Source of the DNA: Cycas panzhihuaensis | Taxonomy: Eukaryota; Plantae; Cycadophyta | Length of the DNA: 64,000 bases | Direction of reading: 5' to 3' | Assembly: GCA_023213395.1 (NCBI GenBank) | Contig: CM041465.1 | Location: forward strand, 88,233,741-88,297,740 | Part shown: piece after piece, positions 24,456 through 54,117 of the stretch | Numbering within the stretch: the stretch's first letter is position 1 | Layout: each line of letters begins with the position of its first letter | The notes under the pieces: generated by a model | What the model saw: only the letters and a program-made list of their open reading frames with translations | Database searches by the model: none | Told to the model about the DNA's origin: nothing | Position numbers and translations under genes: made by a program

Positions 24456-24457
<2 letters not shown>

Positions 24458-24527
<70 letters not shown>
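24458..24527. repeat. (TA)n microsatellite
   Basis: Directly visible; lies at the junction of two truncated elements. Confidence 0.98.
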
Positions 24528-24531
<4 letters not shown>

Positions 24532-27500
24532 GTCACGATTCATCCCAACGTGGCCTTGTTTAAGCAAGAGGAGAGATTTCATTCCACTCTCAAAAGGATG
24601 AGCCACATCAAAATAGTTGATGAACTCATCCACAAGTTGTTGGAATAAGAAGATGGAATGGGCGAATAGGCGATAGAAGCATTTGAGGGCATCGCCTTGA
24701 AGAGATCATAGAAATAGTTTCATTAATATGTGATCGTAGGCCTAGTAGTCTATGCATTCCATAGAGAAACTATAGACATGCTTTGTTAGATCCTGCGATG
24801 AAGTTCTATCAAACTTGGGAACTTCAGGGGGATGAGGCAGTAAGTTGGTTCTTAGCACCTCGATAAATAAGGGTGTCGATCCATAATCTATAAAGGGATG
24901 CACCCTTGCCTGGATCATAGGATCGAAAAAGGATATGGGAGGCAATGAACAAGGAACGAATGGGGGTGAAAGGCCCATCCCTCCTTAAGGAAATACCCCT
25001 TGTTGAAAAAGGACTTGAGGATAAGCACATTGAAAGGAAATTGGGTTTCCTTGCAAAGGCACGGCATAAGGAGGTACGCAAGATGGTGGAAATGAGGGCT
25101 TAGGGACTGGGTTCTATCCATATGGGCTACCCGTGGGTGGTGCGACCCCATATGGATGTAAAGGGTTCACCCCATAAACTGAAACATGGTTCCCTTTACC
25201 ATGCCCCCAAGGCTGAGATGTATAGACTGGGGGTACGTAAAGAGAAGGACCACTAGGTTGGATTTAGGCGCATATGGAGACGGATCTTACATGACTAGAA
25301 GTAGAGGCATTAGTGGTACCTCTATGCCGACTAGGGAATACGTGTTCTACGTTAGGAGGTGGCATGTTGGTTTGACTAGGGAAAGGTATACTAACCCCAA
25401 GATGGGAGAAAGACATACCGTGAGAGGCACCTCCCCCAACCACCCGAAGAGTTGGGACCGTGATGAGAAGTAGGAGGCGCAATAGACGTCCCTAGGGTAG
25501 ATGTAAAGATCGAACGGGACGGATGCGTAGGCACAAATGAGTTATTTGTTGTAGGAGGTATAGATGTGGATAAAGATGGTGGGTCAGGGACAGATGAGGA
25601 AGGTTCCCCACCACGCAAGGTGTCCTCAAACCACCTAGGATGTGATTGAAGACAAGCAGCATGAAAGCACTCGTTAAGGGCTTCAACCACGTTGATAGGA
25701 GGGGTATCCACCTAATCGTAGGAGGTAGATGGGACCTCAAATGAAGTGGACCTCTCAGGGTTCTCCTCGTAAGAATCATCACCTGGGTGATGAATCTCAA
25801 GAGAAGATGGGCCCTCTACTCCATGAGTAGAGGGATGGACATCAAGTGGGTGTTGTTGATCACCCAGATAGTAGATAGGATCATCAGCCTCATGGGTGGA
25901 CCCTGGAAAGGATGTGGGAAACTCATGAGCTCAGGAAGCAAAGGCATGATATGCCCAATCCGAAGGGTATCCTTCCATTGTCAAATCAGAATCCAATGAT
26001 GGAAGGAGGCGGTATGTAGGATCTTCTAACAACGGAGGTAAACCTCATAGGCGACATGAGAAGCATCGTATACAAAACTTGCCAATGCATTAGAAGAAAA
26101 AAAAAGAATGCAAAGTATGCATTGGGGGCTGCCCAATGAAAGATATAAAGGGAGAAACTGACTAAAAGGTAGTAGTACCAACAAGAAGGGATAGAAACTA
26201 GCTCCCTTACTGGCAAGTCCCTAATATAGTCACTAGTGGAACTGCGTCTACGGGATGGTCACTATGCTTGATAGGGACTGAGATGGTCAACAACTGAAGC
26301 TGGGGGTATGAATGGAAACCTATAGGCGAGAGGGAACACCACATAGAGCATCTATGCGTCAGAGCGCGAGTTTGGGACCCGTGAATGGTGCCCAACTACC
26401 TCGGTGTAGTTGTCAAATTCAAGAGAGAAGACACACGCAGGGGTATCCTGGATGGTCTTAAAGAGGGAGGTCCTCCCACCCTCGGATGGTCGGAAGGGAG
26501 GACGAGGAACCCTCGATGGAGAGGTTCCTATGGCGAAGGAACACAAGACAAAAGTGTATAGGTAAAGGGCCTAGGACAAACGTAGGTAGGCTTCCCTAGG
26601 CTAATTGGTCTAAGCAAATCTAATCAAGGGAAGGAGTAAAGAAAAGGGGCTAAGAGCTACTCTCTCTTTCATTCAACAACCAAAGGGCAAGAGAAAAAAA
26701 GAACAAGCATCTTGTATGCATTCAAGCAAGCAAACTAAATGAAGTACAACTATGGGTACTTTTAGGCTAGATAGGAGAAAGGGAGAGGAATGTAGTCCCT
26801 ACTATGCCATTTTCCTATGAAAAATAAGCACACAACACACTTATGCAAAATAAATACAAGTAGCTAATTTATTACCCTTTTTGCTTTTACATGATCTATT
26901 AAATAAATACAATAGATTTTAGATAAGAGCAAAAAGGGGAAGGGGTGGATGGAGAGAGACGATGCGTACCTGGGAAGTATAGATGTTGATGAAGAGCCTC
27001 ACTTGTGCACAACATACGCCTTCTTACCAATAGTCAGTGCATGACCAAAGTTGGTGTGAAAAACAGGGGCTTCCTTACCTTTCCCATATAAAAGACAAAG
27101 TGAAACAGAAAAGCAAGGAAAGCAAGTAAACGTACCAAGAAGCAAGTAAAGTGGAAGACAAGAAAAAGGGTGAAGGCTTACCAGGAGTTGAGTGTTCTTC
27201 CTCTTCACAGATGTTGCTTCAAACCTACATCCACAAGAGTCTTTCCCTTCTAAGAAGGGGGCTGCAAGAAACTATATATGCAAATATATGATATGAATGC
27301 TAAAACTTATATTTGAAGTTAGTGTAACTACTGCTGAAAATAATTCTACTTTCCTCAAAGTAAAACCATGCATACCAAGTAAGAAATGAAAGGGTAGCTT
27401 CAGGATGTCGAAACCCTCCGCTAAAGGCTCTCCACGTAGCCTCAACACACAGCAAGGTCAAGGTTATGCAACAGTCTATGAGTAGAAAATAATCATGAGG

Positions 27501-28816
27501 ATAAATTATACCAGATGTAGGAGAGATGCTTAGGTAACGAAGCTGCTATGGACAGTGAATCGCCGTGCAAGCCTCACCAAAGGTCCAAAAGGATGCCGGA
27601 CAAGATTAGGGGTATAGAGAAGGCCCAAAAGAAGGGCATGTAGGCCTGGAATCAACATAGCAAGGGTCACATCTTTGGTATCCAGAGCGAGGATTCCACC
27701 CACTCCTAGTTAACTCAAGGAAAGCATGGGCATAAGAGAGGAAGGATGGGAAGGGGTTTTCCCTTAGGGAGTAGGTCTAACTGGGAAGGATCCCATCTTA
27801 CTCCCTTTGTCCAATGCTTATGAGCCCTCTAGTGCAGCTTTCTTGAAGAAAACCAGTGGAGAAATAGGATGGAAATCAAAGGATACAAAGCCAAACACTA
27901 GGAAAAATAATCCTTCCTATAGCCAACGAATAAAAGAGAAGGAAAAATACAGTTTCAAGTAGGCTCTAATGGAACAAATGCATACTAAATCATGAAAATA
28001 AGGTAAAGGGTACCTGCTAGGCTGAGATGAGGGCAAATTTGCCCCTGCAACCAGCGGGAGGGAGCAGGTCTTGCAAGGTTTGCAGGGTGTTTCCTAAAGT
28101 GGGGTTGTAGAAGACACTTGCTGGGCGAAGTTGAGGAAGAAACGAGGAGATCTTGCATACAAATGCTTGGAGGAGAGTCTCCAACCACGAAACAGAGCTG
28201 CTATAGGCGGATCCTGAGCTAGAACAGGAGAAAACGTAGAGTTGTAGGTGCACATGTGAAGGGGAAGAGGAAGAGAGTAGAAGTACAGTAGTAAAGCGTG
28301 ATGTTTGAGAGCCAAGAGATGTGAAATGATGAACTTTTTAGGATTTATACTCATCTCAACCCCAATCGAGTGATTAGGGTGCGAATAGGGCTGAGTTGGT
28401 CACTTGTCTACGTGGCAATTCCGTGAAAAAAGTGAGAATTACCACAGTGGATTAAAAAAAAAAAGTGCAACAATCACACCACAGTAAACTTCACGGTACT
28501 GCTTAGTTTATAGCAGTGCGAGACTAGAAAGCCAAAATGATAATGGCCAAGGTTCTAAGAGCCCTAAAAGAGGTGTGATAGGCCTAAGAGGGGCTAGATC
28601 TCCTGTCCAAGTGGTTAGGGACAGTTCGGATGACATATGAACTAGGCTAAATGAGGCACCAAGAGCTAGAAATCCTAGAAATATCATGATGAGGACATAG
28701 GACCAGGGTATGAGTAGATCATACTAACTTAATGGGGCTTGAGGTGACGTGGAGGTAGCGCGGAGGGTCGTAGAGTACCGTGGGGATGCCTACCTTGCAA
28801 AAAGGTAGGTCCTACA
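24528..28816 (-). mobile_element. 5' fragment of an Ogre/Tat-like gypsy element (long LTR, PBS, gag start)
   Basis: Gag-like PKFDRTSSQDLTKHVYSFSMECIDY at 24742-24978 (minus) after a Pro-rich leader. PBS-like TAGTGACTATATTAGGG at ~26219-26235 (minus) resembles the tRNA-Arg PBS TGGCGACTCCACTGGG. Putative LTR ~26237-28816 begins TGTAGGACC. Confidence 0.6.
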
Positions 28817-29052: not shown

Positions 29053-31840
29053 TGAAGAACGTATGAGGACAGAACAAAGCAGGTAAAATTTTTCTCAATC
29101 CATATTGACAAAGTTTAAACAAATTTACAATGTGTTAGTGGTATTGATGAATATTGGGGGTATTATGCCCCAAAACATATAGTTTGGGAGGCGATCAGGA
29201 GCTCGCCTCAATTGTCATAATTTAAAAATAAAATAGCAATAAACAAAATATTAAACTAAACTTACCATTACATAATGATAGCTTGTGGCAGTTAGAGTAG
29301 GATCACATACTCTAATGTACACTCTTAATAATTAGTAATGAACATTAGACCCAACATTCTCCCCAATTATGTTCATTACATGAAACTCTATGCTTTTCTT
29401 TAAATTTGTGGAACTTGTCCTTTAGACAAACTTTAAGAAAGAGATCTATTGCTTGTTCTTTTACTTTGTCATCATCTTATATTAATGTCTTTGCAATGTA
29501 GTTCCCCTTGATAATATAAGGTTCATGTGGTTTCCAAGCTTATCTTAGTAGGACGAAGTTGACTTGATTTAAATGAGTAGGTCTAGCTTCACTAGGATCT
29601 TTATTTTCTTTATATTTTATTTTGGAGTGATTATCAACTTTATTGGAGTCATCAATAGTATATACAATATTATCAAATACATCATTGTTATTCTACTCTA
29701 TCATTTATCCTACATATAAAACATCATCAACATATTTAATTTCTTCTAGTTTTGTAATGGCTCCCCCATAAACCAATTCTAAAATATCCCATGCATTCTT
29801 TGATGTAGTTATCTCACTAATTCTAGAGAATGTATGGTCATCTAATGCATAAAATATTAACGCTAAGTCTTTGTTGTCTCTTTTACATTTTCTTTAAAGT
29901 TTTATTTGTCTTCATTGTAGCCATCATTTATAAGTTTCTAAAGATTATTAACAATAAAATATAATTTCATTAAATTTCTCCAAAGTTAAAATTTGGTTCC
30001 ATCAAATATAGGTATATGTATATCACCAAGATTTATTGTCATTATAAACACTTTAATACATAATCCAAAGAGAAATATATGGTCTTATTAATCAAGTTAG
30101 AATCCTTAACATCAAATGAAAATAAATTAATAAGAATGCACCTTTTTTAATGAAAAATATATATATGACTCAAGAAATCATTTAAAAAATAATTTAAATA
30201 AGGTATAAAATAGTATACAATTAAAGGAAATACGATACCCTTTGAATGATCTTATACGCATGCAATAGGATGCACTCTAAATGCACTTTTAGATGCAATA
30301 AAAGAACCTTAGGTGATGTTTTAAAAATAAACTTTAATAAAGAGATAAAATGAGCCTATTATGAGTTTCAATATATATATATTAATAAACTAAAGATAAA
30401 TAAGCAATAAATACACTTTTATATGGGCCCCTTTCAAACTACAAAAAGATGTAAAGTATGCTTTAAATATAGCCTTTAAATATGCACTTTTATTTTAGCC
30501 TTGAATGCACTTTTAAAAATATGCTTTAAAAGAAGTAAGTTGACCTTTAAATGAATAAAATAGGCTTGATATGAGCTTTGACATAAAGTGAATGGACTAT
30601 AAACTAAAATAATAGCCTTAAAACAAAGTTACTAAGGGTTAGCAAGCATTGGTTTGTGAGATTGGCTATCAAAAGTCTTCCTTTCTTTCAAGAGGCCAAA
30701 ATTTGTAAAAATCAAATGTGAGCCTCTACAAATCAAGTAAAATTAGTCAAAAATAAATTAGTAACTCAATATCATATAAATATACTTGAATGAAATAATA
30801 AAATAGCTCAACATAGTTGAAAAATGCTTAAACTTTAACTAAATAGAATGACTAATTTTAGTAAAGTTAAACTCCTATAAGATATCTTTAAAACTCAATA
30901 AAAGTAGGTCGAGTATGTAGACAATTAAATTCTCTTTCCAACAGATCCAACTGTTTGAAAAATAGGCTACTTGATCAAAAGTTATAGTCAAAATTGTACA
31001 AAGATCTTTTTAAGGCAAAAAAATGAGTAAGGGGAGGGGGGGAGGGGAGGGGTGTTAAGCCCCTTTGAACTGAGGCCCCAGGTCACCTAAAGGGAAAATA
31101 AGATCACCTGCTAACCTACAATGATGGCTAGTGGATTTGAAATATTATTAAAAGGAATTAAATCTTTTAAAAACTAAAATAATCAAAAAGAACCTATAAC
31201 TTTTTCAAATTAGATGCCTTTTTTGACTAAAAACAAGGTTACGTGAAGCCTCAATCGAACCACCTGTTGGGGGCTTAAGAGGGCTAACTCTAAAGATTAT
31301 AAAATTAAATTAAATCAATATTTAAACTGTGAAAAAGAAATATATGTATAAAAAATAAATAATAGATGCACGACGAGAATGAAGAAATGGTGAACACAAT
31401 CTAGCTTCAGAGAGTTAGATCTCTCAATCGAGGTAACTAAAATCTGATCTGATTTCTCTATCATAAAGATAACTCTGTTGGGATCATAACAAGAGATCAT
31501 ATGGCAGGGTTTTATTATACCAGCAATGAACTACAACAGTTTAAACATAGGAGTTTTTCCCATAACTTCAAGGAAAAGATAAACTGAGATTTAGAACATA
31601 TGCAGAGCAGTAGATTTATCAAATTTTTAATGTTGAGTAAGGTCAGAGTTGCTTGTCGCCTAAATAATACATGGAGTCACCCAAAATTATATCACCAAAA
31701 GCAACAGGATATGCCCAAAATGGTCATAATGAGGAAGCCATAAGTAAGGAACAATTGGTGGCTCTTATGGTCAAAGCAGGTTCCTTATACCCTACAATTG
31801 TAGAGGATATTAGAGATTTTGCAAGAAAGGACCCTACTCA
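29053..31840 (-). mobile_element. Related non-autonomous copia-derived cargo element, copy C (5' end deleted), inside the Tekay 3' LTR
   Basis: Interrupts the 28845-32287 vs 45300-45964 LTR alignment. LTR 29053-29356, PPT GGGGAGAA, an RNase H tail remnant, and a gag remnant at ~29760-30050 similar to copies A and B. Confidence 0.8.
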
Positions 31841-31844
31841 TCAG
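31701..31844 (+). pseudogene. Fused fragments: PPR motif plus UBP1-associated protein 2 (UBA2)-like segment
   Basis: ATGYAQNGHNEEA matches the PLS-PPR motif GYAQNGxxEEA. It is in frame with SKEQLVALMVKAGSLYPTIVEDIRDFARKDPTHQ, which resembles the UBA2 pre-RRM segment (GSQYPSIAEEIKSVASADPAHR). Confidence 0.65.
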
Positions 31845-32329
31845 ATCCGATCTTCATATATACTACCCATAAGAAATTATCTATTTGGCTTCTGTATTAT
31901 ACAAGCCACAATAATGTAATGATTATAACATTCAAGGCATTAGGTAAAAGTGTCTAACACCTTATAATCAAATCACATCATAAGAAACTAACTATTTTAA
32001 GAAACACAAAATGGTCCACTCTCACACCTAATGGAGTACCATATGAACTTCCCACCTCACATATGGTGAACAAGACAAAATGGTGCACCCTCACACTTAG
32101 TAGAGCATAGAGTAGGCTTCCTCCTTAATAAGGGTGAACAAAAATATGAATATGAAAAGAAAATATTTACTTTTTAAGTATGGCTAGAAGGATAAAAAAG
32201 GTTTATATACATATGAAGTTATTAGATAATCTATCTAAAGGGAAATAATTCTCAAGTCATAAGTCACCTTAGGGTTGGGCCTTTATAGTCCCCTACCCTT
32301 TAATGAACCATTAACCTAATGCAGTTCAA

Positions 32330-36890: not shown

Positions 36891-38389
36891 GCCATTCTAT
36901 AATCATCTCTAAATCTATCTATTCTTTGCTCAACTATTTGGTCTACAATTTTTGTATCTTATTAACTTTCAAATTGAATGTTATTCAACCTTTAAACTCC
37001 ATTGCTCTAATACCACTATATTAGGGCTTGATTTGCTTAACATTGAAAACAACTGTTACAACCCAACTTAAGGCCAACACCTGATTTTTTGATGCTTGAA
37101 TTTGTGAAGGCTTCTCAACTATTAATTTACACAGTTGAATTGTTTTCCCAATGAAAGTGACAAATTCAAGACATAAAGGTGCTTATACAATTTTAAAAAA
37201 TAGCATATATAAAGATACAAGTGACCATAACTAAAGCATTCATTACTAAGATAACATTTGCTATAGATATAATAAAGAATAGAAGGCCAACTAGCTAGAT
37301 TACTTCTAATGCGTTCACCCATCCAACCTTTCATGATCTTATAGCGAAAAGTACCCTCAAACTAGAGTACATAATATGAATGTAGGAGTATTGATGTTTT
37401 CTCTCTTCACATAAGACCCCCAAGCTATCCTATCACAAAGGTTTCTTTAAAATACAAATCTTACAAATAGTTACTACTGTAATCTTACATATTCTATTAT
37501 AACCACACTTACTTCACACTTTTCTTGTATATCAAAATAATAACTAAAAATATCATATATATATATATATGATTCTTGCTAGACTAATCTTATCAGACTA
37601 CCATCATTGTGCAAACTAGTATGTCAATAATCCCATGTATTCACTTTACCTACTCATTTCAATGGGTTGTTTGTTTCATACCACATAACTCACATCAATT
37701 GTTGAGGTTAATAATCATCACCCCACTCCCACCTTTCAATCAGGAGTGCACACCTCACTTCCACCAATTTACACATGTGAGTGCTTACATGTGAAGGTAA
37801 GTATAAGATAAGGTTAAGTTGATTTGACTTAATTTGAGCTAAGTTCATCTGAGTTAAATTAAGTTATATTTTATTATTATTTAAATTTTAAGGGTTAAGG
37901 AGTTTCCCTCCTCCCCCAAACTATATGTTTGGAGGAGTGTGCAACCTTGATGTCTTTAAATACCACCTACTTTTGGATATTTGTAATGCTCTCTCTCAAA
38001 TAATGGATTGAATACAAAGGATTTTCTGTTTATGCAATATGTGTTGATTATGTATTTATGCTCTGCCATGTTCTCCATATTTTATTTTCCTACATTTGGT
38101 ATCAGAGCAGAGATTGTTGGCCTATTACACCTCCATTTGAAGTTTTTTGAAGAGCAAGAAGATCTATTAGCATTTTGAGGCAGATCTACTCACAACAAAG
38201 AAATATCAGTTATATTTATCTTCTACAAAGTCTTTTTAGCAGTTTTTTGTATTATTTTTTCATCAAGATCTAATTATTCTTTATTTATACTTGTGAAATA
38301 ATAAATATTTTTTTAGATCTATGAAGGAACATAGCTACAATCGCAAGTATTCAAGATTTTATCACTCTATGGAGGTTTTATTCTTCAGA

Positions 38390-38560
38390 TCTGTATATTT
38401 TATCAAATATTTAGCTATTTTTCTAGTTTATTTTTATTTATATATTTAATATTTTTTTTAGATCTGTAATATTTTCTCCAAATCTATAATATTTTCTCTA
38501 AATCTATAATATTTTCTTCAGATCTATGTAATATTTGCTCTAGATCTACACATTTTGTCA
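38390..38560 (+). repeat. ~20-bp tandem repeat (AGATCTRTAATATTTTCTCY)
   Basis: Five to six adjacent units. Confidence 0.7.
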
Positions 38561-38860
38561 AATATTTAACCATTTTTTTGGTACATTTGGTCTATTTATT
38601 CAAGTTTTTCTTTCATATCTGTGCAAGTTTTAATGCATATTCAGCCTAACAAGCCTCTTGGAGAAGTTATACTATAGTAGATCCATCTACTGGAAGAATC
38701 TAAAGTCTATTTTCTGCAAATCAACCACAGCTGCATTACTAGGTTCTTCTTCCTCTTATATTCAAATTTAAACATATATATTTCTTATTTCTTTGATATA
38801 TTTTCTTTAACATATTTGAAAAAAAAAAAAATTTGGTTTCATTTGTGGCTTCTCTTCCTA

Positions 38861-38989
38861 CTCTTTCCTTTCATTTACAAGAAGAAGAGCTATTGCACCA
38901 GCTGCTTGTATAAATTTGGTTGTACATTTACCTCGTTGCACCAACACTGCATTTCTAATAAGCTTTTCAGTTGGATTAGTGCAGCAATT
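38861..38989 (-). pseudogene. Captured fragment of a signal peptide peptidase-like (SPPL) PA domain
   Basis: NCCTNPTEKLIRNAVLVQRGKCTTKFIQAAGAIALLLVNERKE resembles SPPL DCCSxPxxKL...LVxRGxCxFTTKA...AAGAxAxLxxN. Confidence 0.75.
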
Positions 38990-39056
38990 TCCCTTTTTTC
39001 TGTTGCTTTGTAAGTTTGTGGCCTTCAAGTTCAATGCATTGCTTGCTTTAGATCAC

Positions 39057-39167
39057 TTTAAGCTGGATAAGCTGGCTATAGTAACGCTTGTCAATGTCCT
39101 TTTACTCTGCTTGTTTAAGATTAACTTTATTTTTTGAGATGTTACTATGATAGACTGATATTCTTCC
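39057..39167 (-). pseudogene. RAD50: Captured fragment of DNA repair protein RAD50
   Basis: GRISVYHSNISKNKVNLKQAE*KDIDKRYYSQLIQLK vs recalled plant RAD50 GTxSVYxSxISKNxVxLKQAQYKDIDKRxFDQLIQLK. Confidence 0.88.
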
Positions 39168-39174
39168 CTAGTAT

Positions 39175-39650
39175 TTGTTCCTCTGCATTGTTTGCTCTAC
39201 ATGTTTCTATTTCATTCTCTGCTCTCATTCTAGACACTAAAAGATCATACTCCTCTTGCATCCTTGAAATCTCAGCATTCAGACGATTAGTGTTCCTTTT
39301 AGCAGTTTTAGCTAACTTTTTCACTTTCTCCTCAAGCCTTGCTACATTTTCATTTGCAGTTATTAGTTTAGACCCTGCTTCAGCATGCGACTTCATTTCA
39401 TGTTGAAACTTCATCTCAAACTGACTACAGCGCTTTACTTGTGTCTGAAGCCACTCCTGAAACTGTTTGACCTCTTTTGTGAATGGTTCCTGGACTGCTT
39501 TCTCACGCCCATTGGCAGCCACTAACTCTAGTTCCATGACCTGAATGTGAGCCTCTAACTTGTTCTTATGAATTTCTTGATTACTATTGTCTTCTTTCAA
39601 GGATTTAACAACAGATTCAAGCTCCATAAACTATTGTTTCTTGATACTGG
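39175..39650 (-). pseudogene. MAD1: Captured N-terminal coiled-coil fragment of spindle checkpoint protein MAD1
   Basis: ORF 39145-39627 reads ELELVAANGREKAVQE...CSQFEMKFQHEM...RLNAEI...CRANNAEE, vs recalled plant MAD1 EQELAAAKAREKMLQE...CHELEVKLQNEM...RLNNDI...CRAQNAETE. Confidence 0.85.
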
Positions 39651-39709
39651 TATTTTGAACCACTTTTGCAACTTACACAGGGGATCATAAATCACATCCA
39701 AGTTTCTAT

Positions 39710-40243
39710 TCATGTAAGAAGTTTGCACGTCCATAAGTGTGCCTCTAGTAAATCGTGTGCCATTTAGTTGATTCCACTACAATGCTGTAGGTTTAAGACA
39801 AGCAATGTTTCACCTATTTGGTGAACCCGACGTAAACCCATCTTCCCCATATAAGGCAGACACTTGTCTGTAATCTGCATAGAACCAGAAAAAGAAAGAA
39901 TCCGTAAAGTATATTTTCTTGCATATGCTAAAGAAGTAATTCCACTATCTGTAATACCACATTTTGACATGTCCAAGTCTTATAGAGTTAAGTAGCAATC
40001 TGCAATAATCCTGAGGCTTTGATCTGTCAACTTTCTATAGCCATCCAGATTTAGAGTCTAAAGGGTCTCTCCAAATAGGTTAGCTATAGTATATATAGCC
40101 ATGTCTATTACTTCAATACATCTAGATAGGTTCACTTTCACCTAGGTTATTTTATTGCTTTCCATGAGTGCAAAAAGACCATCATTAGAGACCCCAATAA
40201 GCCCGTTGAGGTCAATATATTGCACCTGAGGACATACCATTTC
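39710..40243 (-). pseudogene. EBF1: Captured C-terminal LRR fragment of an EIN3-binding F-box protein (EBF1/2-like)
   Basis: CPQVQYIDLNGL...KVNLSRC...TLNLDGYRKLTDQSL...DLDMSKCGITDSGITSLA...ETLLVLNLQHCSGI...LWTCKLLT* matches the EBF C-terminus (LLGLNLQHCNAI...LWRCDIL). Contains stops and a frameshift; the paralogue cannot be resolved. Confidence 0.88.
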
Positions 40244-41989
40244 TAAGGGAACAAGAAGAGGAGACTACGAGGGAGTCGGAAAAGAAATTAGCCCAAGTAG
40301 CGGGGACGAAGAAGATTAAGGTGGAGGAGTGACCATTCTTCGCTGCCTGGGAGGAGTCCTGAACATCATCTTGGACCTTTAAATTTTTCTTTTAAATGGA
40401 AGAGCTATGACCACGAACCCTAACACTGCTCAGTGCATCATATATTCTCCACGTCTTCGAGCCCCCAACTTTCGACTGAAGCGCCTCTTTTTCATCGATT
40501 CGATAATCGATATTAGAGTGCGATTCGCCCATGGCGGTCGCTTTGCATGATAGCCCAACAATGACGACAACAGCGTTCTAAGTTTTGTTTATTATTTTGT
40601 ATATTTTTTTTTTTTAAGTTTCAAAAAAATAAATTTTATTGTATAAAATTTAAGTTCTAGGGTTTTAAAACCCTAGTCCCTTTAGATCTTTAGCCCTTAG
40701 TTTTATGACCCCTTTACATGACCTTTAGCTTTTTTAAAAGGGGCTTCAGTACCTTTATAATTTTTTTTCTTTTTATTTTTTTCATTAAACATAAAGTACT
40801 TGGCAAATTTTTGCCATATCTTTTCATTAGGTCATCGGTTTCTGACGAAACTAGTCCCATTACATCCAAAATTTTCTGAGGTATGATTTCAATTCGTTAT
40901 ATTCCATATTTGAAGCTGATTTGACTTATTTTCAATCAGTTTAAAATCAGTCATTCATTTTTAAAACTTTTTAAAACTAGTTTTACAAAATTCTTTTTTT
41001 TATCATATTATATTTTATCACTGGGAGACTATTTTCTACCCGAATATGTTTTGCAATCATTTATTATCAGTAATCTTCATCACCATCTATTCATTCTATT
41101 TTTTAGGATTTATTTTAATTATTATTTTAATCAATAAAAGTGACACTTTAGCGTTTTTTTAATATTTTAACATAAAAGTACTTACTGCTATTATTATTAT
41201 AACTTTTCTGTTTTATATTAGAATTCCAATCTATCAATTTTGTTGGGAATCTAACTCACTCATCTTTGAACTAACACTATTTTTTATAAGTTTTAAAGTG
41301 TTTTTATAAATTTTCAAATCCATTAAAGTTAAAATATATAATAGCCTCCAATTTGTCATTATTACATATTTACATATATTACTTCTCAAAATTTTCAACT
41401 GAAAATATATTAAGCAACTCTCTAAATTATATTTGATTATTTTTTTATTATTCTATAATTATTTTTACTAGCATTTTTATAATATTTTGAGCCCCAGGCT
41501 CTCGTTAATCCTTAAAAGATGACTGCATCTTTTGTTCATTAAAATATTGACTTGTAGAAACCCGCTTTTAAAACGGTTAGTTCCATTGAATAGTTTTTCG
41601 TTGATCCTCAAATTAGTATAATTTCATTTTATTCTGACATTGTTTAGTATGGCATTGAAGCTGTTAAACTTGAACATTCAGTATATCCTAACAGGCTTGT
41701 CTTCTAAACCCTTTCTTAAGGAGTTCTTCATTTTATTTCTTATTAATTACTTATACTATATGTGATCATTGTCAAAGTTTCAATTCAGATTTGCATAATT
41801 AAAAGGATCTTAGTTACATTTACAATTTGCTTATATATTCATCATATTTCAAATTTTATCTGAAATTATATCTTATAAGTTTGTTGATTTATTGAGTTCT
41901 TTAACTTAGTAAAATCATATTCCTTTTTATGTGTTCAAGTTTTATGTAAAATGGTAATCAATCTTAATAAAGTACAATTTTTTATATTT

Positions 41990-42660
41990 GATGGCCATAA
42001 TTTTTCACAATGACATCAGACAATGCAACATTATTTTATTACAAATGATCTTTAGAAATACTTATAAGATGAGTATGATATTAATATTAAGGAAAATATT
42101 AAAAAATATAATGAAGCCTTAGCTTTACTATTTTGCACTATAGATGATAATGTGTTTTCTAAAGTTTGTGAAATGACAACCTCTAAAACCGTATAGGACA
42201 CTCTATATTCCACTTATGGGGGAGATACCCTCAATGAATTTAACATTGATATTGTTGAGCATATGAGATAGATGTCAGAGTAGGTGGATTGTAATGAAAA
42301 GACCAAGGAAGATTCAATTCAAATGCATGATCATCTTGTTGCACAAGAACCTGATCCTTCATTTGAGGGGAAGAGATATGATGACATGATAATCACTCAC
42401 AATATAAAATTTTCAGAAAATAAAGTTAAAGTTTCAAAAGTTAAAGTCAAAGTTGCAGCCACACCTCCACATCTAAATCAAGCTTCATTTACTTGCAGAT
42501 TTTTTACACCACTCAATGGCAAAGACACATACATTGCTAAAAGGATGAAACAAGTTAATAAAGATCAAGCTAAGAGACAGATTTTTAAAGTTTTTTTTAA
42601 GTATAAATTTTACAAGTTTAAAGAGAAGACAAAGTTGTTCGTGCTGACAATTAAGGGGGA
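41990..42660 (+). pseudogene. copia gag N-terminal remnant joined to an RNase H C-terminal remnant
   Basis: GHNFSQ*...NDL*KYL and a UBN2-like helix, then DQAKRQIFKVFFKYKFYKFKEK...IKGE ending at the PPT. Confidence 0.7.
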
Positions 42661-43099
42661 GAATGTTGGGGTTAATGATCATCACCCTACTCCCACCTTT
42701 CAACCAAGAGTGCACACCTCACTCCCACTAATTGATACATGTGGATGCTCACATGTGAAGGTAAGTATAAGGTAAGGTTAAGTTGATTTGAGTTAATTTG
42801 AGTTAAGTTATATTTTATTATTTTTTGAATTTTAGGGGTTGAGGAGTTTCCCTCCTCCTCCAAACTATATATTTAGAGACGTGTGCAACCTTAGTGTCTT
42901 TAAACACCGCCTACTTTTGGACATTTATAATGCTTTCTCTCAAACAATGGATTGAATATAAAGGATTTTCTGTTTATATAACAATGTATTGATTATGTAT
43001 TTATACTCTACCCTGTTCTCTATATTTTATTTTCCTACATCAACAATGAGAGTATGAATCCATACCCTATAAGGCATTTCTCATGCTTATCTAAAATTC

Positions 43100-43590
43100 A
43101 AGAGGAGACACACTCAATATCCTTAAAGAAATAGAAAGATACACTTAACATCCGTATTCTTATAATTAATTTCATAGTATAGGAGAGACAAATGCAACAT
43201 CCTATCTCAAGGAAAATGAGAGACACACTCGACATCCATATTCCTATAATCGATTTCAAAGCATAGTGAGACTAACTCAACATCCTGTCTCAAGGAAATA
43301 AGGAGAAACTCTCAACATCCATATTCCTTCAAATCAAGTATAAAGTATATAAGAGACTAACTCAACATCCTATCTAGAATTGTTATGTACATCAATAACA
43401 ATAGTCCAATGAGAATAATGTTACAATTCACACATATATTTATGATATAATCCAAACTTATCTTTTCACAAAATGCTAGCAATCACCAAATGAATATTAA
43501 ATAATTAATCAAGGGGAGACACACTCAACAACCTTATTTCTTTAATCCAATTAAAAGCATAGGGAAGACTAACTGAATATCCTATCTTAA
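43100..43590. repeat. Degenerate tandem repeats in the LTR (GAGAC-ACA/TAA-CTCAACATCC core)
   Basis: The core recurs roughly every 35-50 bp, about ten times. Confidence 0.7.
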
Positions 43591-44730: not shown

Positions 44731-47250
44731 GTATCATCTAACTGGTATAATATTTAAAACTAACATATTCAAGTTAAACTCTCTTGTTACAGATGAATTC
44801 AAGGTGACAATTTCAACATATATGGATCTATGTCTATAATGGGTGGAATGCTAGTGTGAGGGTTTTGTTTGTATGACATATATAAAGCAAGTTTATAGAA
44901 GACTGTCATATAACCAAATCAAGTTTTTGCTTAAATTTCTATCTTTCCTGTTTCAATGTTTTAAACAACTTTCTATTATAATCTCAACATTGGCACCCTT
45001 TAACTCAATTTTTGTAGCTTTAGATTCCACATTCAAACACTTCTTAGTGCCTATTTTGTTAAGTTGTTTTTGAGTATCTATATGTTCCTTATATTACTCA
45101 TCACCTACCATCTCCAAAGCATATTCCAATGAGTCTCTTAGTTTGCTTTTGCCAGCATTGGATGACTCACTTGAGCTTTTGGGTGGCAAGGAATCTGATT
45201 ATATTTTCCTCTCTTTTGATGCCTATTATCACATCTTTAGCTTGTTTACTCCAAAGAGAAGCTTGAGTGATACATCATCCATTCCAAAAGATTATAAAAA
45301 CTAGGATCGAAATCCATTTTTAAATCATGTTTCAACTTCTTTTCAAGGTCTTCCAACATTAATGGGATATATTATTTAGCATATGCTCTTCAATTTGGTG
45401 AGTTTAAAATTAGCAATACTTTCATGTTAATCACTTGGACTTAAGCTTCTAAGAGAATAAAATATAGATCTATCACCTACCCTTACCTTTGTTTCTACTC
45501 CTCTATTCTTCCTCTGTTCATATCATCTACTCTGATATATACTACACATCAGAAGTAATCTAGATGGCTTTTGTATTATATAAGCCACAACAATGTGATA
45601 GTTACAACATTCAAGGTATTAGGTAAACGTGTTTAGCACCTTGCTATCAAATCATATTACAAGAAACTAACTATTCTAAGAAACATGAAATGATGCACCC
45701 TCACACCTAGTGGAGTATGACATAAACTTCCACCTCACGTAAGATGAACAAGACAAAATGATGCACCCTCATACCTCAAGGATCATGGAGTAGTCTTCCA
45801 CCTTACATAGAGTGAACAAAATTATGAATATGAAAAGAAAATAATTATTTTTAAGCGTGGTTGAAAAGATAAAAGGAATTTACATATATATGAAGTTATA
45901 AGATAATCTATCTAAAGAGAAATAATGCTTAAGTCACAAGTCAAATTAGGATTAAGCCCTTATAATTAGAGTTAGATACATGTGAATGGGAGATTAGCTC
46001 TAAAGTTAAAAAACTAGATTTCAGCATGGTTGTAGATGGGCATAACAAGTATCATGGAATTATACTTTTATCCATCTATCTTCCATCAACAATTGATTTA
46101 ATGATACACATTTGACACATGACTAATTAATTGAAGCAAGGTCAGTACATATGACCTAAGTACTTGTACATAGATAGATAATGGAGGTTTTCATGCAGTA
46201 TTGGATGATCTCAAATGATAACCAACTAATCTTTGGCACGATAAATATCTTAACATTAGTATTAAGCTATGTCTAGCCATACCATAGTATACTATAGATA
46301 GAAAAAGGCTTTAACAATTTTTCTAAGATTTATTATGTCCTAACTATAGAACTAAGGAATAAGATATAATAAGAAAAGGTGTAAAAGAAGGAAGGGGTAA
46401 TAAGAAATGAACCATCTTTTAGCGAGGGATTTATAGAGGCCTAGGTACACCTTTTTTCTTTTTTTTTTTCTAGAATTCATTTTTTCCTCTCTACTTTCTA
46501 TTTCTCTTCTTCTTTTTTACTTGTATTTGTCTACCATACATCATGGCAAAAAATTATCTTTTATTGAAAGAGAATTTACATGCAATGTGCTTCCTAGACT
46601 TGGGAACTCTTTAGTAAGTACATTAAGCTACCAAAGATCTAAGGTCATTATGATTTTATCAATTTGTATTGAAAGACTTTACTAAATAGCATTCATGCAC
46701 TTAGGCATTCTATTGTATGCAGATTATTTCATATTAAAATATAAGTATTTTAAGATTGGATTATTTTTCTCAATTCATTAAGCATATTATCTAATAGTTC
46801 AATGGAAAATGAGTCATTTGGTGAATACAAATGCACATCTTACATATGGTTTGTTGCTTGTTGAAGGTTCTTTCGTAGTTTCTTCTAAATCAATAGTTAA
46901 TAGTTGTAAGAATACATGTTAGGGTTCTTTGACAGAATTATAATACTCAACCTTATAGATTATTAGGGAGTACATAATTTGTATACTAGTGTTGTATGTT
47001 AATGTTAATAATGTATTTAGCGATAGGTCAGTGATTGTAGTTAGGATCAAAATCCCTCATTATTCTACAAAAAGTTTTTGCTTATTATTTTAGCCCAAGA
47101 TAAATCAATACATTGATCCAATTCTTCTAACAAACACAAAGGGGAAGAAGTTGAACTCATCCTTTTATTGTTTTCTTCTTTATTTAGAATTTTATTTTCA
47201 CTTCTTTTTTCTTTTTATTTACATCCTCACCATTTCTTTTATCTTTCTTT

Positions 47251-49984: not shown

Positions 49985-52515
49985 ATGAAGGAAAAGATGG
50001 GGAAGACAAGATAACGACCCATAACCGTTTTGGGAGACATACTACAGTAGATGAATTAAATCTCGCGCAATGGTTTGAAGAAAATTTTAGGGTCATACTT
50101 CAGTTAAAATCTCAATTACTGCGAGAAGGCATCATCAACTAGTATCTCGATGATATTATCATCCAAGAACCAGTAATGCTTGCAAATATCATTGAACATC
50201 TTCGATCTAATGCACGACACAAAATAAATAACATACATATTTAGACAGGAAAAGAAGTAATCAATATAACTGAGACGATCCAATCGATTACATACACAGC
50301 AGCAACAAAATTTAAGAACATTAATGCAGATTGATTGGTCAATAATTAAAAAGGGATGGAAAGTCTGCCAGACTTGGAAACAGAAGTATGATTCAAACGA
50401 GGACTTAAGGGAGATCAAGGAAGCTTTCACACATCTGAGTTTACATGAAAAGGAGAAGGCTAGCATACAAGATAAAGATCAAAAACATCAAGATCAAGAA
50501 CATCAGCCCAGTCCAAAGGCAAAAAAAGCAAGATTCAGAAATTATTACGAATAGAGAAAGAAAAAGAAACCTACAAATGGATTTAGACAACGAAGAATAT
50601 AACAACTCAAGCATATAAGAACATCAACAAAGCCATTAGAAGCAGCAACAATAACAATAGCGGCATCATGCGCAGCAAAGAAATGAGGAGTGAAACAGAA
50701 ATTTCTAACATTCAACGGAAAGGCAAAAGAGGATCTAACGAGACATTGTAATATCTGCAAAACAATATGGATGGCCAATAGCAAGATTGACAAAGATCTT
50801 TGGGTATAATCATTTCTAGTCACACTATGGGACGTTGCGAAGGACTGGTTTAAAGAATTCAAAGAGGGACATTTTAAAAATTGGGCTTCCCTATGCAAAG
50901 CAGTTGAAAAAGAATTTAGACTTTTACAAGATGATAGTGAGGTGGTAGACCAAATCTACAACTTGAAGCAAGAACCCAAGGAAATAATAAGAAGTTACAA
51001 CACAAAGCTGAAAAGTCTAATAAAGAAAATAGAAAGTGAAGTGACGGATGGGTTAAGAAAAGATGGTTTCTAGAAGGATTACTTCCGAAATATAAAAGGA
51101 AGTTACGAGTCATTCTACTTGCATCATATCAAGAAGCAATAAACCGAGCAATGAGTCTTGAAATCAAAGAGAAAGCAGAGGCCTGGCACCAAGAGAAAAT
51201 AAGTGATGCACAAGTAAAAGAAGAATCTTCAATAGAAGCACTTAGGGAAGACTTGATGAGGATGTTCATAGATTTTACACAAAATCAACCAAAAGAATGA
51301 CGCTACATATGATATGTCAAGTGTCGTACAGAAGGCCACTTGGAGTCGGAGTGTCTAGATAACCAAGGATTCAAATACTGCTATATATGTATAATGAGTA
51401 ATCAATATATTAAACAGTGTGGATTCAATGTTCAAACATGCAGAAGACAAGAACGGGATGTCTTCTTTACTCGGCAAGAAACAAATAAACCACCTCTTGG
51501 AAGGGAGCGAGGTGGACAACCAGTACAACAAGATGCTCAAGGTCGATCAATGGTACAATACTTTTAGTACAAAGTATGGGGCCACTTTAGCAGAGATTGT
51601 CCCAATCTAGAAAATAATGTCTCTACACTATGTTGATGGTACGAACCAAGTGACCATGATGATGACCATTGCACAAAGCAACAAAACAAAAATGTCAACC
51701 TCGTAGGAGTAATCACAGAGGAAGTACAACCTTTACTGACATATGCAGTGTATACAAGAAGGCCTAAGCAATCAACGTATCCTAATGCTCAGAATGAAAA
51801 AGAATGCCCGAGTCAGGCCACAGAATTGGTACAAGCACTACAAAAACAAGAGCACGATGCGACCTTGACCAAGCCACAATCTGTAGAACCAAGGGGTAAT
51901 GGATCGACGGAATCAACAATAACGCCCAAAGAAGATACAACACATAAGGATGGTGTTAACTAAAGAGTTAACAATTAAATTATCAGCGTTACTCGAGAAT
52001 GATAAGCTTCTACTACAAACATTCGAGGACTATATACGATGAATCAAGACAACAAGAAAAGAAAGAATATCAGTAAAAGAATGTAGGACTCCCATGTAAC
52101 AACCTCACATAGAGGACCAGCATGTATGATCTCTTAGGATCAACCAAGACATAATTATTTCAATGAATATACTAGGGCACATATTGGAGAATACAGTAAT
52201 TAATGGTGGGGCTATAGTGAACATTATCCCAGTTACAACTTGGGAAGCAAACGTTAGACCTCAACTATGGCCTCCTACATTTCAGCTACGACTGACTAAT
52301 CAACATGGTGTGTAATCATTAGGGATGATGCAAGCACAAAAAATAAAATTAGGGAACCAAGACTTTGTAATAGATTTTGTTATAATACCGATGATTGATG
52401 AAATACCACCAACTTATGACGCCTTGTTAGGTCGACCCTAGTTACGAAATGTGTGCGTACTCCAAAATTAGCGATGTAACACATTGATAATTAAACAAAG
52501 AGGAAAGAAGCAACT
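49985..52515 (+). pseudogene. gypsy gag and protease, degenerate
   Basis: Gag-like segment at ~50700-51150, zinc knuckles at ~51315-51605, protease at ~52190-52500 (GGAIVNII...YDALLGRP). Confidence 0.8.
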
Positions 52516-52647
52516 TGTAGAAAGAAGGGCACATGCACAATGTAATCACTAGATCATAAAATAAGCAAACATAGGTAACAAGATAACACTGCACATATAC
52601 ACTAGTTTAACATGTGGAAAACCCCTTCTGGGGAAGATAAAACACCT

Positions 52648-54117
52648 CCTAATCGTGCATGCCAAAGTTTGCTGAGTGAGTTAGGTTTGGCAATAAAGGC
52701 ACTAAAAGATTTTGATTTGTTATTTTGTAGACTTGTTAGACTATAGAGACGTGTTATGATCAACAGGTCATGAGGCAATACGTCTAAATTTGTTTAATGG
52801 TTCCCTAATGATAAATTTATTCTTCTAGAATTTGACGACAAGGTTTTTCTGACAGATTTGATAGACAAAGAGTAGGTTTGGTAATAAACCAAGTACGTAA
52901 AATATGTCCTTGATTGAACCATCTTTTAAGGTAACATCACATGATCCTTTGACTTTAAGTTAAGTACCACTTCCGAAAGAAATCTCTTCTTCAGAGTTCG
53001 TTTCAAATTGATAAGTGGTTAAATTTTTCTGGTGTCCAATCATGTGATGGGATGCACCAGAGTCAAGGATCCACTGTGGTAGATGATTTGTAGGGGCAAC
53101 AAATACAGAAGTTGTTGCTGCTAAAGAATGATTATGAGTTTGTCAATTTTGAGGTCATGATTGAAGATGGGATTGAGGTCGATTTTGCAATCCCTTGGAA
53201 GCTTTCCATGCTTCTGAAGCTATTCTACTTCTGCAGACATCAATAGTGTGGCCTCTTTTATGACAATAGGCACAACTAGTGTTCTGAGAAGAAGTTGCGT
53301 TGTTCCTATTATAAAAGAACTGATTAGAAGTATTCAGGTATTTAGATGGACCAGAATACTTAATATTATTTTGTAAATTTGATGGTGAACCTCTATGAGG
53401 TTTCTAAAATTTTGGATTATTATTCTGTTGTTTGTTTTTAAATTATGGCTTAGTTTTGGAAAACAAAGCCTGTGATGGATCTTTTAATGTGCCTATTTGA
53501 ATTAACATTATTTGATGTTCAATCAGCTGGTTTATTAACTGATTGAATGTTATAGGCGGGTCGTCAGCTTGTTGTTTGGCAGTTTTGTAGAGATTAAAGT
53601 GTTTTGGTAATTTGTTTACTGCAAGACGTACGAGTGTATTGTTGTCTCTAGCATACGTGATTATTTTCTCAGTATCACCTTCTTTAGTTTTAAATTTGAT
53701 GTAGTTTCCTAGATCTTTATTAATTAATTGAATTTTACTTAAAAAATCCTCAACACTAGAAAAATCGTCAAAAGTAAGGTCATACAATTGCTGTTATAGG
53801 ATAGCCACTTGATGTGTATCGACCTTGTCATATTTTTCTTGCAAGGTTTTCCAGACAGTGGCTAAGTCATCTATTTCGACTGGTCGATTTACGGTGAGTG
53901 GGTTTAATATGGTGCCTAAGGTTGCATCTGAGTTCATTAGATATACCATATAACTCTCTATAGTATCTTCTTTAGGTTTTTTAAATTCACCTATCACATA
54001 TCGCCATATTTTTTGTTGTTTGAGCTGATGGAATATGCGATTCCTCCAGTCGGCATAGTTTGAGCCAAGTGATACTAGAATTGGAACGCAGGAAGTTATC
54101 CCTGGCATTAATGCCAT
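52648..54117 (-). pseudogene. copia gag, protease and start of GAG-pre-integrase
   Basis: GSNYADWRNRI...IWRYV, zinc knuckle CAYCHKRGHTIDVC, WILDSGASHHM; ends at LWHARLG. Confidence 0.9.

What the first reader, a model, noticed from the sequence alone, without database searches (positions are those of the whole stretch)
38820..40580. Four-gene mosaic EBF-MAD1-RAD50-SPPL inside one TSD-flanked LTR element
Seen: on the minus strand an EBF C-terminus, a MAD1 coiled coil, 37 codons of RAD50 and an SPPL PA-domain piece follow head-to-tail within ~1.4 kb. They are co-oriented and show no visible introns. The element has two LTRs, a PBS, a PPT and a TSD (TCAAT/TCAAC), so the mosaic plausibly moved as one unit. 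Inference: serial template switching between co-packaged mRNAs. The parents act in ethylene signalling, the spindle checkpoint and DSB repair, so element-derived antisense RNA or siRNA could affect them.
Basis: partly seen in the sequence, partly recalled or inferred. Interest (0 to 1): 0.88.

Follow-up and report, generated by a model that had tools for sequence, protein, structure and literature searches.

The report
Antisense host-mRNA mosaic in copia element
A decayed, non-autonomous copia-type jumping element in a gymnosperm-like plant genome carries a 1.7-kb patchwork of reverse-transcribed pieces of at least four host genes; such capture is known, but here the patchwork sits backwards (antisense) in a recurrent slot between the primer site and gag.

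Summary
The element (37700-43039, + strand) has two LTRs, a tRNA-iMet PBS, a PPT and the TCAAT/TCAAC duplication. Its leader carries a 1.73-kb cargo (38853-40582) made of six co-oriented pieces. In sense order on the minus strand they are:
- an unidentified 5'UTR-plus-ATG piece;
- MAD1 5'UTR and codons 1-44;
- the EBF C-terminus and start of its 3'UTR;
- MAD1 codons ~101-252;
- 40 RAD50-like codons;
- a PA-domain (SPPL-like) piece.

MAD1 and EBF are confirmed by protein searches. RAD50 and SPPL rest on weaker evidence. Four pieces match long transcript-like contigs of a related organism at 92-95% identity and without gaps. One MAD1 contig matches on both sides of the EBF piece. Contigs from other DNA runs span three junctions, so the mosaic exists in further copies.

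MAD1 is split by EBF. The whole cargo is antisense to the element, which simple copy-choice onto co-packaged mRNAs does not predict. Serial reverse-transcriptase switching in plus-strand polarity is my best reading. No data support an siRNA effect.

The scan's first readers noted the same antisense-slot pattern at many other places in this genome; those notes are unchecked. Verdict: a new variant of a known kind, interest 0.55.

The parts
37695..37699 (.). left target-site duplication TCAAT
   Evidence: Read directly. Contigs of three DNA runs join 37685/37689 to 43036/43046 without the element, which are empty-site copies of the host repeat.
37700..38094 (+). 5' LTR (TG...CA)
   Evidence: Matches 42664-43039: 84.6% with gaps, 89.3% ungapped, K2P 0.118, 34 transitions and 6 transversions.
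38097..38108 (+). primer binding site, tRNA-iMet type (TGGTATCAGAGC)
   Evidence: Exact match, 2 nt after the LTR end. This sets the element's polarity as +.
38109..38852 (+). family-conserved leader, ending in the 18-mer TTTGGTTTCATTTGTGGC (38832-38849)
   Evidence: Summed depth of 2,500-16,000 in DNA skims, against 3-90 in the cargo. The 18-mer is identical in the sister copy at 24420-24437.
38853..39047 (-). PA-domain fragment (SPPL-like), 3'-most piece of the mosaic
   Evidence: Pfam PA, E 0.0013, below the cut-off. PA-bearing M36 peptidase models hit weakly. By depth arithmetic a transcript-like contig covers only about 38976-39047, and it diverges at 39047. The SPPL name rests on a motif recalled from memory.
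39048..39060 (.). 13-nt filler between two pieces
   Evidence: Lies between the contig end at 39047 and the contig start at 39061.
39061..39180 (-). RAD50-like fragment, 40 codons with one internal stop
   Evidence: 110 of 120 nt match positions 3268-3387 of a 5384-nt contig of run X24. No hit in PDB or NCBIfam. The RAD50 name rests on memory of the plant sequence and on the transcript's length.
39181..39629 (-). MAD1 codons ~101-252 (161-aa open frame 39148-39630)
   Evidence: tblastn against Ginkgo MAD1: E 2e-64, no gaps. 415 of 449 nt match X24 record 11 at positions 1859-2307.
39629..40235 (-). EBF (EIN3-binding F-box) C-terminal LRR, about 175 codons with several stops, plus about 80 nt of 3'UTR; 24 extra nt at 39812
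   Evidence: P0025 'EIN3-binding F-box protein', 62%, E 2.8e-16. The tblastn match runs to the C-terminus. Pfam LRR_6. X24 record 12 (2925 nt) matches at positions 523-1105.
40237..40418 (-). MAD1 5'UTR (49 nt) plus codons 1-44
   Evidence: The same X24 record 11 matches at positions 2482-2663, 173 of 182 nt. MMFRTPPRQRRM aligns with the Ginkgo MAD1 N-terminus MILRTPPRPRRM.
40419..40582 (-). unidentified piece: 5'UTR-like sequence, ATG at 40532 in a GCCATGG context, 38 codons
   Evidence: Read directly. No Pfam or PDB match. No contig of X24 covers it.
40583..42652 (+). family-conserved internal region with a truncated copia gag remnant (about 41930-42260)
   Evidence: Homologous to the sister copy at 23529-19614 on the minus strand. 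Weak Retrotran_gag_2 hit, E 0.025. blastn links it to a gag at 29708-29893 with E 2.1e-5. High depth.
42653..42663 (+). polypurine tract AAGGGGGAGAA
   Evidence: Read directly; it abuts the 3' LTR.
42664..43039 (+). 3' LTR
43040..43044 (.). right target-site duplication TCAAC

Best explanation
This is an old, non-autonomous Ty1/copia-type LTR retrotransposon with no pol and only a gag stump. Its long leader, between the PBS and gag, holds a 1.73-kb mosaic of processed host-mRNA fragments in antisense orientation.

Shown:
- the element's anatomy;
- the MAD1 and EBF identities;
- gap-free matches of four pieces to long transcript-like contigs;
- the co-orientation of all pieces;
- the MAD1-EBF-MAD1 interleaving;
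- near-seamless joints;
- further copies that contain the same joints.

Inferred: the mosaic was made in one episode inside a virus-like particle. A reverse transcriptase switched serially between host mRNAs, each copied 3'->5' for 120-600 nt. Two pieces run into 5'UTRs, as expected if the enzyme ran towards or off an mRNA's 5' end before jumping.

Because the cargo is cDNA-sense on the element's plus strand, the growing strand was most likely the plus strand. After the PBS-mediated second transfer it would have left the minus-strand DNA in the leader, copied host mRNAs, and landed back upstream of gag. The alternative is that the minus strand copied host first-strand cDNAs.

The chimera then retrotransposed as a unit using proteins supplied in trans. 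It is now a decaying pseudogene mosaic with no demonstrated function.
For: - Anatomy and polarity.
- MAD1. EBF.
- Transcript colinearity: X24 record 11 (2809 nt) matches 39181-39629 and 40237-40418. The 174 nt skipped equal the 58 codons missing relative to Ginkgo MAD1. Record 12 (2925 nt) matches 39629-40235. Record 10 (5384 nt) matches 39061-39180. Identity is 92-95% throughout, which fits a single capture episode.
- Joints: 39180|39181 has no gap, 39629 is a 1-nt overlap, 40236 is a 1-nt filler, and 39048-39060 is a 13-nt filler.
- Other copies: DNA contigs from other organisms span the PA/RAD50, RAD50/MAD1 and EBF/MAD1 joints at 87-93% identity.
- Age: LTR K2P is 0.118 and cargo-parent divergence is 5-8%, so the capture was about as old as this insertion.
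- Slot: a sister copy shares both slot borders but carries different cargo.
- Second case in the window: another copia element has Peptidase_M18 cargo (E 3.3e-8) antisense between its PBS and gag.
- Published context: multi-gene LTR-mediated retrocopies and their re-mobilisation are documented (PMC5131818). A first/second-exon bias of TE-captured fragments is reported in gymnosperms (PMC13477047).
Against: - The parental genes' exon-intron structures could not be fetched. Loss of introns is therefore inferred from colinearity with contigs of a run whose RNA nature is only a guess by the tool.
- Known LTR-mediated retroposition gives sense cargo and microsimilarity at the joints, median 6 bp (PMC5131818, PMC7264820). 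Here the cargo is antisense and the piece-to-piece overlaps are at most 1 nt.
- Plus-strand switching onto RNA is my inference and, as far as I know, not a demonstrated pathway.
- The RAD50 and SPPL names lack tool support.
Confidence: 0.68

Rival explanations
1. DNA-level capture. A double-strand break in the leader of an integrated or extrachromosomal copy was repaired by end joining or synthesis-dependent filling, which patched in cDNA or genomic fragments.
For: The joints have overlaps of at most 1 nt and fillers of 1 and 13 nt, which is typical of end joining. Capture of reverse-transcribed spliced mRNA at breaks is documented in mouse zygotes (PMC4516963, title and abstract only).
Against: All six pieces share one orientation, which random ligation would give about 1 time in 32. 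The same MAD1 template resumes 174 nt further on. The same slot borders recur in a sister copy. A second element in the window also has antisense cargo. Random ligation explains none of these.
Confidence: 0.15
2. Nested insertion. The cargo is another mobile element that landed in the leader, such as a Helitron, a Pack-MULE/CACTA, or a LINE-made chimeric retrocopy.
For: Helitrons and Pack-type elements carry co-oriented multi-gene fragments (PMC13317346). LINE reverse transcriptases make chimeric retrocopies.
Against: There are no terminal inverted repeats; only A13/T13 runs lie about 20 nt outside the cargo. No poly(A) follows the 3'-most piece and no duplication flanks the cargo. The pieces follow mature transcripts without gaps. 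A sister copy has the same borders with other cargo.
Confidence: 0.07
3. Functional antisense module. Element transcripts carrying antisense MAD1, EBF and RAD50 pair with host mRNAs and trigger siRNAs, so the orientation is kept by selection.
For: The cargo would be transcribed as antisense from the 5' LTR. At about 92% identity many perfect 21-mers would remain. The antisense orientation recurs in the window and in unchecked notes elsewhere in the genome.
Against: No contig of the RNA-like run crosses a mosaic joint or links cargo to leader. The cargo decays like a pseudogene, with stops in EBF and RAD50 and transition-rich change. Cargo genes differ between copies and have no common theme. 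The copy is old (K2P 0.118).
Confidence: 0.08
4. Assembly chimera or chance similarity.
For: The region is repeat-rich and nested.
Against: Independent runs from other organisms hold contigs across three of the joints. E-values are 4.5e-28 for MAD1 and 2.8e-16 for EBF.
Confidence: 0.02

Closest known systems
Maize Bs1 and LTR-mediated retroposition (Elrouby & Bureau 2001/2010; Tan et al. 2016, PMC5131818)
   Same: A non-autonomous LTR element whose interior is partly replaced by intron-free fragments of several unlinked host genes. Bs1 has three. A mouse 'Super' retrocopy has four genes plus an Alu. The chimera can be re-mobilised as a pseudo-retrotransposon.
   Different: [quoted passage not shown] Here the mosaic is antisense, lies in the leader between PBS and gag, has overlaps of at most 1 nt between pieces, and one donor (MAD1) is used twice around another.
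Bulk TE capture of gene fragments in gymnosperm genomes (Platycladus orientalis study, PMC13477047)
   Same: A gymnosperm-type genome. Ty1/copia LTR elements carry exon fragments. About 14% of host TEs carry two or more fragments. Captures are ancient and biased towards first and second exons, which matches the two 5'UTR-plus-first-codon pieces here.
   Different: As far as I read it (abstract, the section on fragment capture and searched passages), that survey does not report orientation, a fixed slot, splicing status or junction anatomy.
Pack-MULE / Pack-CACTA / Helitron gene-fragment carriers (review PMC13317346)
   Same: A non-autonomous family whose copies carry different mosaics of host-gene fragments at a set position.
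   Different: Those capture genomic DNA with introns and have TIR or Helitron ends. This cargo follows mature transcripts and sits in an LTR-PBS-PPT element.
Conserved antisense additional ORFs of plant LTR elements (Grande, RIRE2, Retand; PMC7264820)
   Same: Antisense sequence inside an LTR retrotransposon.
   Different: Those ORFs lie between pol and the 3' LTR, are conserved across copies and have no host homologues. This cargo lies before gag, varies between copies and is plainly host-derived.

Membership tests
Ty1/copia LTR retrotransposon (non-autonomous derivative) | Two direct LTRs ending TG...CA | tested here: met
   37700-38094 and 42664-43039, 89.3% identical ungapped.
Ty1/copia LTR retrotransposon (non-autonomous derivative) | PBS complementary to tRNA-iMet just after the 5' LTR, and a PPT just before the 3' LTR | tested here: met
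   TGGTATCAGAGC at 38097-38108. AAGGGGGAGAA at 42653-42663.
Ty1/copia LTR retrotransposon (non-autonomous derivative) | 5-bp target-site duplication | tested here: met
   TCAAT/TCAAC, one mismatch. Empty-site joints appear in three runs.
Ty1/copia LTR retrotransposon (non-autonomous derivative) | copia-type gag | tested here: inconclusive
   Retrotran_gag_2 E 0.025, below the cut-off. The region is homologous to one in the window whose gag scores E 2.1e-5.
Ty1/copia LTR retrotransposon (non-autonomous derivative) | pol (protease, integrase, RT, RNase H) | tested here: not met
   No such ORF or Pfam hit between the LTRs. The element is therefore non-autonomous.
LTR-mediated retroposition / transduction (Bs1 type) | Host fragments derived from spliced mRNA (no introns) | tested here: inconclusive
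   Gap-free matches of 449, 182, 583 and 120 nt to contigs of 2.8-5.4 kb in an RNA-like run. 165 MAD1 residues align to Ginkgo without gaps. Parental gene structures could not be obtained.
LTR-mediated retroposition / transduction (Bs1 type) | Cargo lies between both LTRs and replaces internal element sequence | tested here: met
   Cargo at 38853-40582 inside the element, and pol is absent.
LTR-mediated retroposition / transduction (Bs1 type) | [quoted passage not shown] | tested here: not met
   All pieces read on the minus strand. The PBS, gag remnant and PPT define the + strand.
LTR-mediated retroposition / transduction (Bs1 type) | Microsimilarity at switch points | not testable with these tools
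Contig ends give a 0-1 nt overlap at three joints and a 13-nt filler at one.
Pack-MULE / CACTA / Helitron carrier | Terminal inverted repeats, or 5'-TC...CTRR-3' with a 3' hairpin, around the cargo | tested here: not met
   The inverted-repeat scan found only A13/T13 runs outside the cargo.
LINE-made chimeric retrocopy | Poly(A) after the 3'-most piece, and a target duplication | tested here: not met
   The sense strand has T13 downstream and A13 upstream of the mosaic, and there is no flanking duplication.

The most novel reading that the evidence does not exclude
The mosaic may be one product of a systematic pathway in this gymnosperm-type genome, not a one-off accident. In that pathway copia plus-strand DNA, at or after the PBS-mediated second strand transfer, habitually continues on host mRNAs. 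This would fill a fixed leader slot with antisense, 5'-end-biased mRNA pieces that differ between copies, a 'Pack-copia' system. It would give a mechanism for the very large number of TE-captured first and second exons reported in gymnosperms. It would also make every transcribed copy a source of antisense RNA to host genes.
Probability: 0.3. Interest if true: 0.8.

Novelty: new variant of a known kind. Interest (0 to 1): 0.55.

Why it matters
Capture of host-gene pieces by LTR retrotransposons is known, but its mechanism rests on a handful of dissected cases, all with sense cargo.

This copy is unusually legible. It has six pieces and near-seamless joints. One donor is left and re-entered 174 nt further on. 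Two pieces reach 5'UTRs. There is a shared slot, and the polarity is the reverse of what the textbook model predicts.

If the antisense leader slot proves general in this genome, three things follow:
- it would point to the plus-strand transfer step as a capture route;
- it would help explain the exon-position bias seen in gymnosperm giga-genomes;
- it would raise the testable question of whether such elements feed antisense RNA against host genes.

As a single locus it is an old, inert pseudogene mosaic.

Tried and rejected
- RAD50 piece: no hit in PDB or NCBIfam.
- PA piece: nothing useful in PDB, no usable Atlas hit, and no word-sharing homologue.
- EBF piece in the Atlas: only generic F-box/LRR clusters.
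- Unidentified 5' piece: no Pfam or PDB match.
- TPR/MLP1 (nuclear pore anchor) was the best Pfam hit for the coiled coil, E 1.5e-5 and below the cut-off. I rejected it in favour of MAD1.
- A stem between the slot's flanks (A13...T13) is no stronger than in shuffled sequence, for this copy or its sister.
- A PBS-like resemblance of the conserved 18-mer (TTTGGTTTCA against TTTGGTATCA) was noted but is too short to count.
- Literature look-ups for the MAD1 gene structure gave nothing.
- Full-text searches found no description of antisense leader cargo. That is not proof of absence.
Full report
**The element.** The window is AT-rich (about 32% G+C) and packed with nested LTR elements.
- Direct repeats at 37700-38094 and 42664-43039 begin with TG and end with CA. 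They are 84.6% identical with gaps and 89.3% over ungapped columns. K2P is 0.118, from 34 transitions and 6 transversions.
- Two bases after the left repeat lies an exact tRNA-iMet primer binding site, TGGTATCAGAGC (38097-38108).
- The polypurine tract AAGGGGGAGAA abuts the right repeat. The flanks are TCAAT and TCAAC.
- Contigs from three independent DNA runs join 37685/37689 directly to 43036/43046. These are copies of the surrounding repeat that lack the insertion.
- There is no pol. The only coding trace is a weak copia gag remnant on the + strand (Retrotran_gag_2, E 0.025). That region is homologous to another in the window whose gag scores E 2.1e-5.

The element's sense strand is the + strand.

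**The cargo.** Six-frame translation and searches give the following.
- *MAD1.* The 161-aa open frame at 39148-39630 (minus strand) finds MAD1 proteins among 1.84 billion representatives. The best hit has E 4.5e-28, is 731 aa long and aligns at residues 79-229. Four full-length hits (P0001, P0006, P0007, P0009) carry Pfam MAD. The frame is 71% identical to Ginkgo biloba Gb_26246 residues 102-252, 44% to Welwitschia and 31-38% to angiosperms. The genome is therefore of a gymnosperm, and probably not Ginkgo itself. The first Pfam scan had favoured TPR/MLP1 below its cut-off; I set that aside.
- *EBF.* The 71-aa piece at 39767-39979 finds a protein that its source names 'EIN3-binding F-box protein' (62% identity, full coverage, E 2.8e-16). 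A local tblastn shows the match running through three in-frame stops to the protein's C-terminus at about 39713.
- *PA piece.* It scores only E 0.0013 against Pfam PA. The SPPL assignment rests on a motif I recall (NCC...KL...RG.C...AQ.AGA.ALL..N), not on a tool.
- *RAD50 piece.* No protein tool named it. The name rests on my memory of the plant RAD50 sequence around SVY.S.ISKN.V.LKQA.YKDIDKR...QLIQLK, and on the contig described below.

**Laid contigs.** The most informative result came from laying public contigs on 37400-43300. Run X24 is small: 50 million letters, contigs up to 16 kb, and the tool only guesses that it is RNA. It holds long contigs that match the cargo at 92-95% identity and then run on into unlike sequence.

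| X24 record | Length | Window match | Record positions |
|---|---|---|---|
| 10 | 5384 nt | 39061-39180 | 3268-3387 |
| 11 | 2809 nt | 39181-39629 | 1859-2307 |
| 11 | 2809 nt | 40237-40418 | 2482-2663 |
| 12 | 2925 nt | 39629-40235 | 523-1105 |

- Record 12 shows 24 extra bases in the window at 39812. These are the eight extra codons that are also absent from P0025.
- The 174 nt of record 11 that the window skips equal the 58 codons missing between Ginkgo MAD1 residues 44 and 102.
- 40369 onwards reads MMFRTPPRQRRM, against the Ginkgo N-terminus MILRTPPRPRRM.
- So MAD1 is present as 5'UTR plus codons 1-44, then the EBF piece, then MAD1 codons ~101-252.
- A further piece, 40419-40582, looks like a 5'UTR followed by an ATG in a GCCATGG context and 38 codons. 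It matched nothing.
- The joints are tight: none at 39180|39181, a one-base overlap at 39629, one base of filler at 40236, and 13 bases of filler at 39048-39060.
- The contig lengths fit full-length mRNAs. For MAD1, 2809 nt is roughly 196 nt of 5'UTR, 2268 nt of coding sequence and 345 nt of 3'UTR.

The cargo is thus colinear with mature coding sequence. Intron loss remains an inference.

**Copy number and spread.**
- In three DNA skims the LTRs, the leader (to about 38850) and the region from about 40750 to 43040 have summed depths of 10^3 to 10^5. The cargo has depths of 3-90.
- So the framework is a very abundant family, and the cargo is rare within it.
- Even so, contigs from other organisms cross the PA/RAD50 joint (38919-39167), the RAD50/MAD1 joint (39091-39276) and the EBF/MAD1 joint (40111-40293) at 87-93% identity.
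- That level of divergence is what paralogous copies as old as this insertion would show. The mosaic was therefore copied as a unit after it formed, which rules out an assembly artefact.
- Cargo-to-parent divergence (5-8%) and half the LTR distance (about 6%) put the capture close in time to this insertion.

**The slot.**
- A sister copy on the minus strand (19229 to about 24510) is homologous to 40583-43039 and to 38757-38850, but not to anything between.
- The 18-mer TTTGGTTTCATTTGTGGC, three bases before the cargo, is identical in both copies. The surrounding leader is only about 70% alike.
- Both copies thus share the slot's borders to within a few bases and hold different cargo.
- A different small copia element on the minus strand has its PBS at 56438-56449 and its gag at 53446-54195. 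It carries a Peptidase_M18 fragment on the + strand (E 3.3e-8), again antisense and between PBS and gag.
- Many first-reader notes elsewhere in this genome describe the same pattern. They are unchecked, and I use them only as leads.

**Mechanism.**
- Co-orientation of six pieces, the return to the same MAD1 template 174 nt further on, and uniform divergence point to one episode of serial template switching by a reverse transcriptase.
- The usual model has minus-strand synthesis hopping from element RNA to a co-packaged mRNA. It yields sense cargo, as in Bs1 and in animal LTR-mediated retrocopies (PMC5131818). [quoted passage not shown]
- Here the element's plus strand carries cDNA-sense sequence. 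The simplest fit is that the growing plus strand, after the second strand transfer at the PBS, left the minus-strand DNA in the leader. It would then have copied host mRNAs 3'->5' one after another, and rejoined the minus strand upstream of gag.
- Two pieces end in 5'UTRs on the side towards which such synthesis would run. That agrees with run-off and end-to-end jumping, and with the first/second-exon bias reported for gymnosperm TE captures (PMC13477047).
- A mirror-image model, in which the minus strand copies host first-strand cDNAs, fits equally well. I cannot separate the two.

**Rivals.**
- Break repair with captured cDNA explains the blunt joints, but not the polarity, the re-entry into MAD1 or the recurrent slot.
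- A nested Helitron, Pack-type or LINE-made insert lacks any terminal signature.
- A stem between the slot's flanks is no better than chance.

**Function.**
- Nothing indicates function. EBF and RAD50 carry stops, and the changes are transition-rich.
- The RNA-like run shows the parents' transcripts, not the joints.
- The 161-codon open MAD1 frame is not remarkable for 34 substitutions.

**Novelty.**
- Multi-gene, intron-free mosaics in LTR elements are known: Bs1, and the mouse four-gene 'Super' retrocopy (PMC5131818).
- Mass capture of gene fragments by gymnosperm TEs has been published (PMC13477047).
- The new features are the antisense polarity, the leader slot shared by copies with different cargo, and the interleaved use of one donor. 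My full-text searches found no description of these.
- I rate it a new variant of a known kind, of moderate interest as a single locus. It would be of high interest if the slot proves to be a general pathway.

**Housekeeping.**

Noticed in passing
window 19229-24510 (minus strand): Sister copy of the same family. It is homologous to 40583-43039 and 38757-38850, but holds about 0.9 kb of different cargo (23530-24419) between the same borders. Its 5' LTR was not found, and an unrelated GC-richer block follows from about 24700 to 28700.
   Followed up: partly
window 20841-22000: Very AT-rich tandem array (G+C 14%, period 8-14 nt, more than 100 copies) inside the sister copy's internal region.
   Followed up: no
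window 52200-56850 (minus strand): Another small copia element, with LTR pieces at 52516-52652 and 56450-56586, PBS at 56438-56449, and gag plus a zinc knuckle at 53158-54195. It carries a Peptidase_M18 (aspartyl aminopeptidase) fragment on the + strand at 55596-56066. That cargo is antisense and lies between the PBS and gag, reaching close to the PBS.
   Followed up: partly
window 29335-31916: A related element on the minus strand, with copia gag at 29708-29893 (E 2.1e-5). Its possible + strand cargo at 31588-31916 gave no Pfam match.
   Followed up: partly
window 38832-38849 and 24420-24437: The 18-mer TTTGGTTTCATTTGTGGC is perfectly conserved three bases before the cargo in both copies, although the leader around it is only about 70% alike. 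Its first ten bases resemble the PBS context (TTTGGTATCA). Its meaning is unknown.
   Followed up: partly
window 39567-39763: The stretch holding the start of the EBF 3'UTR and the last EBF codons has 5- to 30-fold higher summed depth in two DNA skims (about 400) than the rest of the cargo. Something in it is repeated more often in those genomes.
   Followed up: no
window 39812-39835: A 24-nt, in-frame insertion in the EBF piece that is absent from the matching transcript contig and from the EBF protein hit.
   Followed up: partly
window 11750-15122: A small LTR element of 3.4 kb (LTRs 88% alike) with a one-mismatch PBS at 12033. Its content was not examined.
   Followed up: no
window 37004-37015 and flanks of 37695/43044: The studied element is itself inserted in another repeat, which carries a PBS-like site on the minus strand. 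A wider direct-repeat pair (31856-32287 and 45535-45964, 80-83% alike) encloses the whole region.
   Followed up: no
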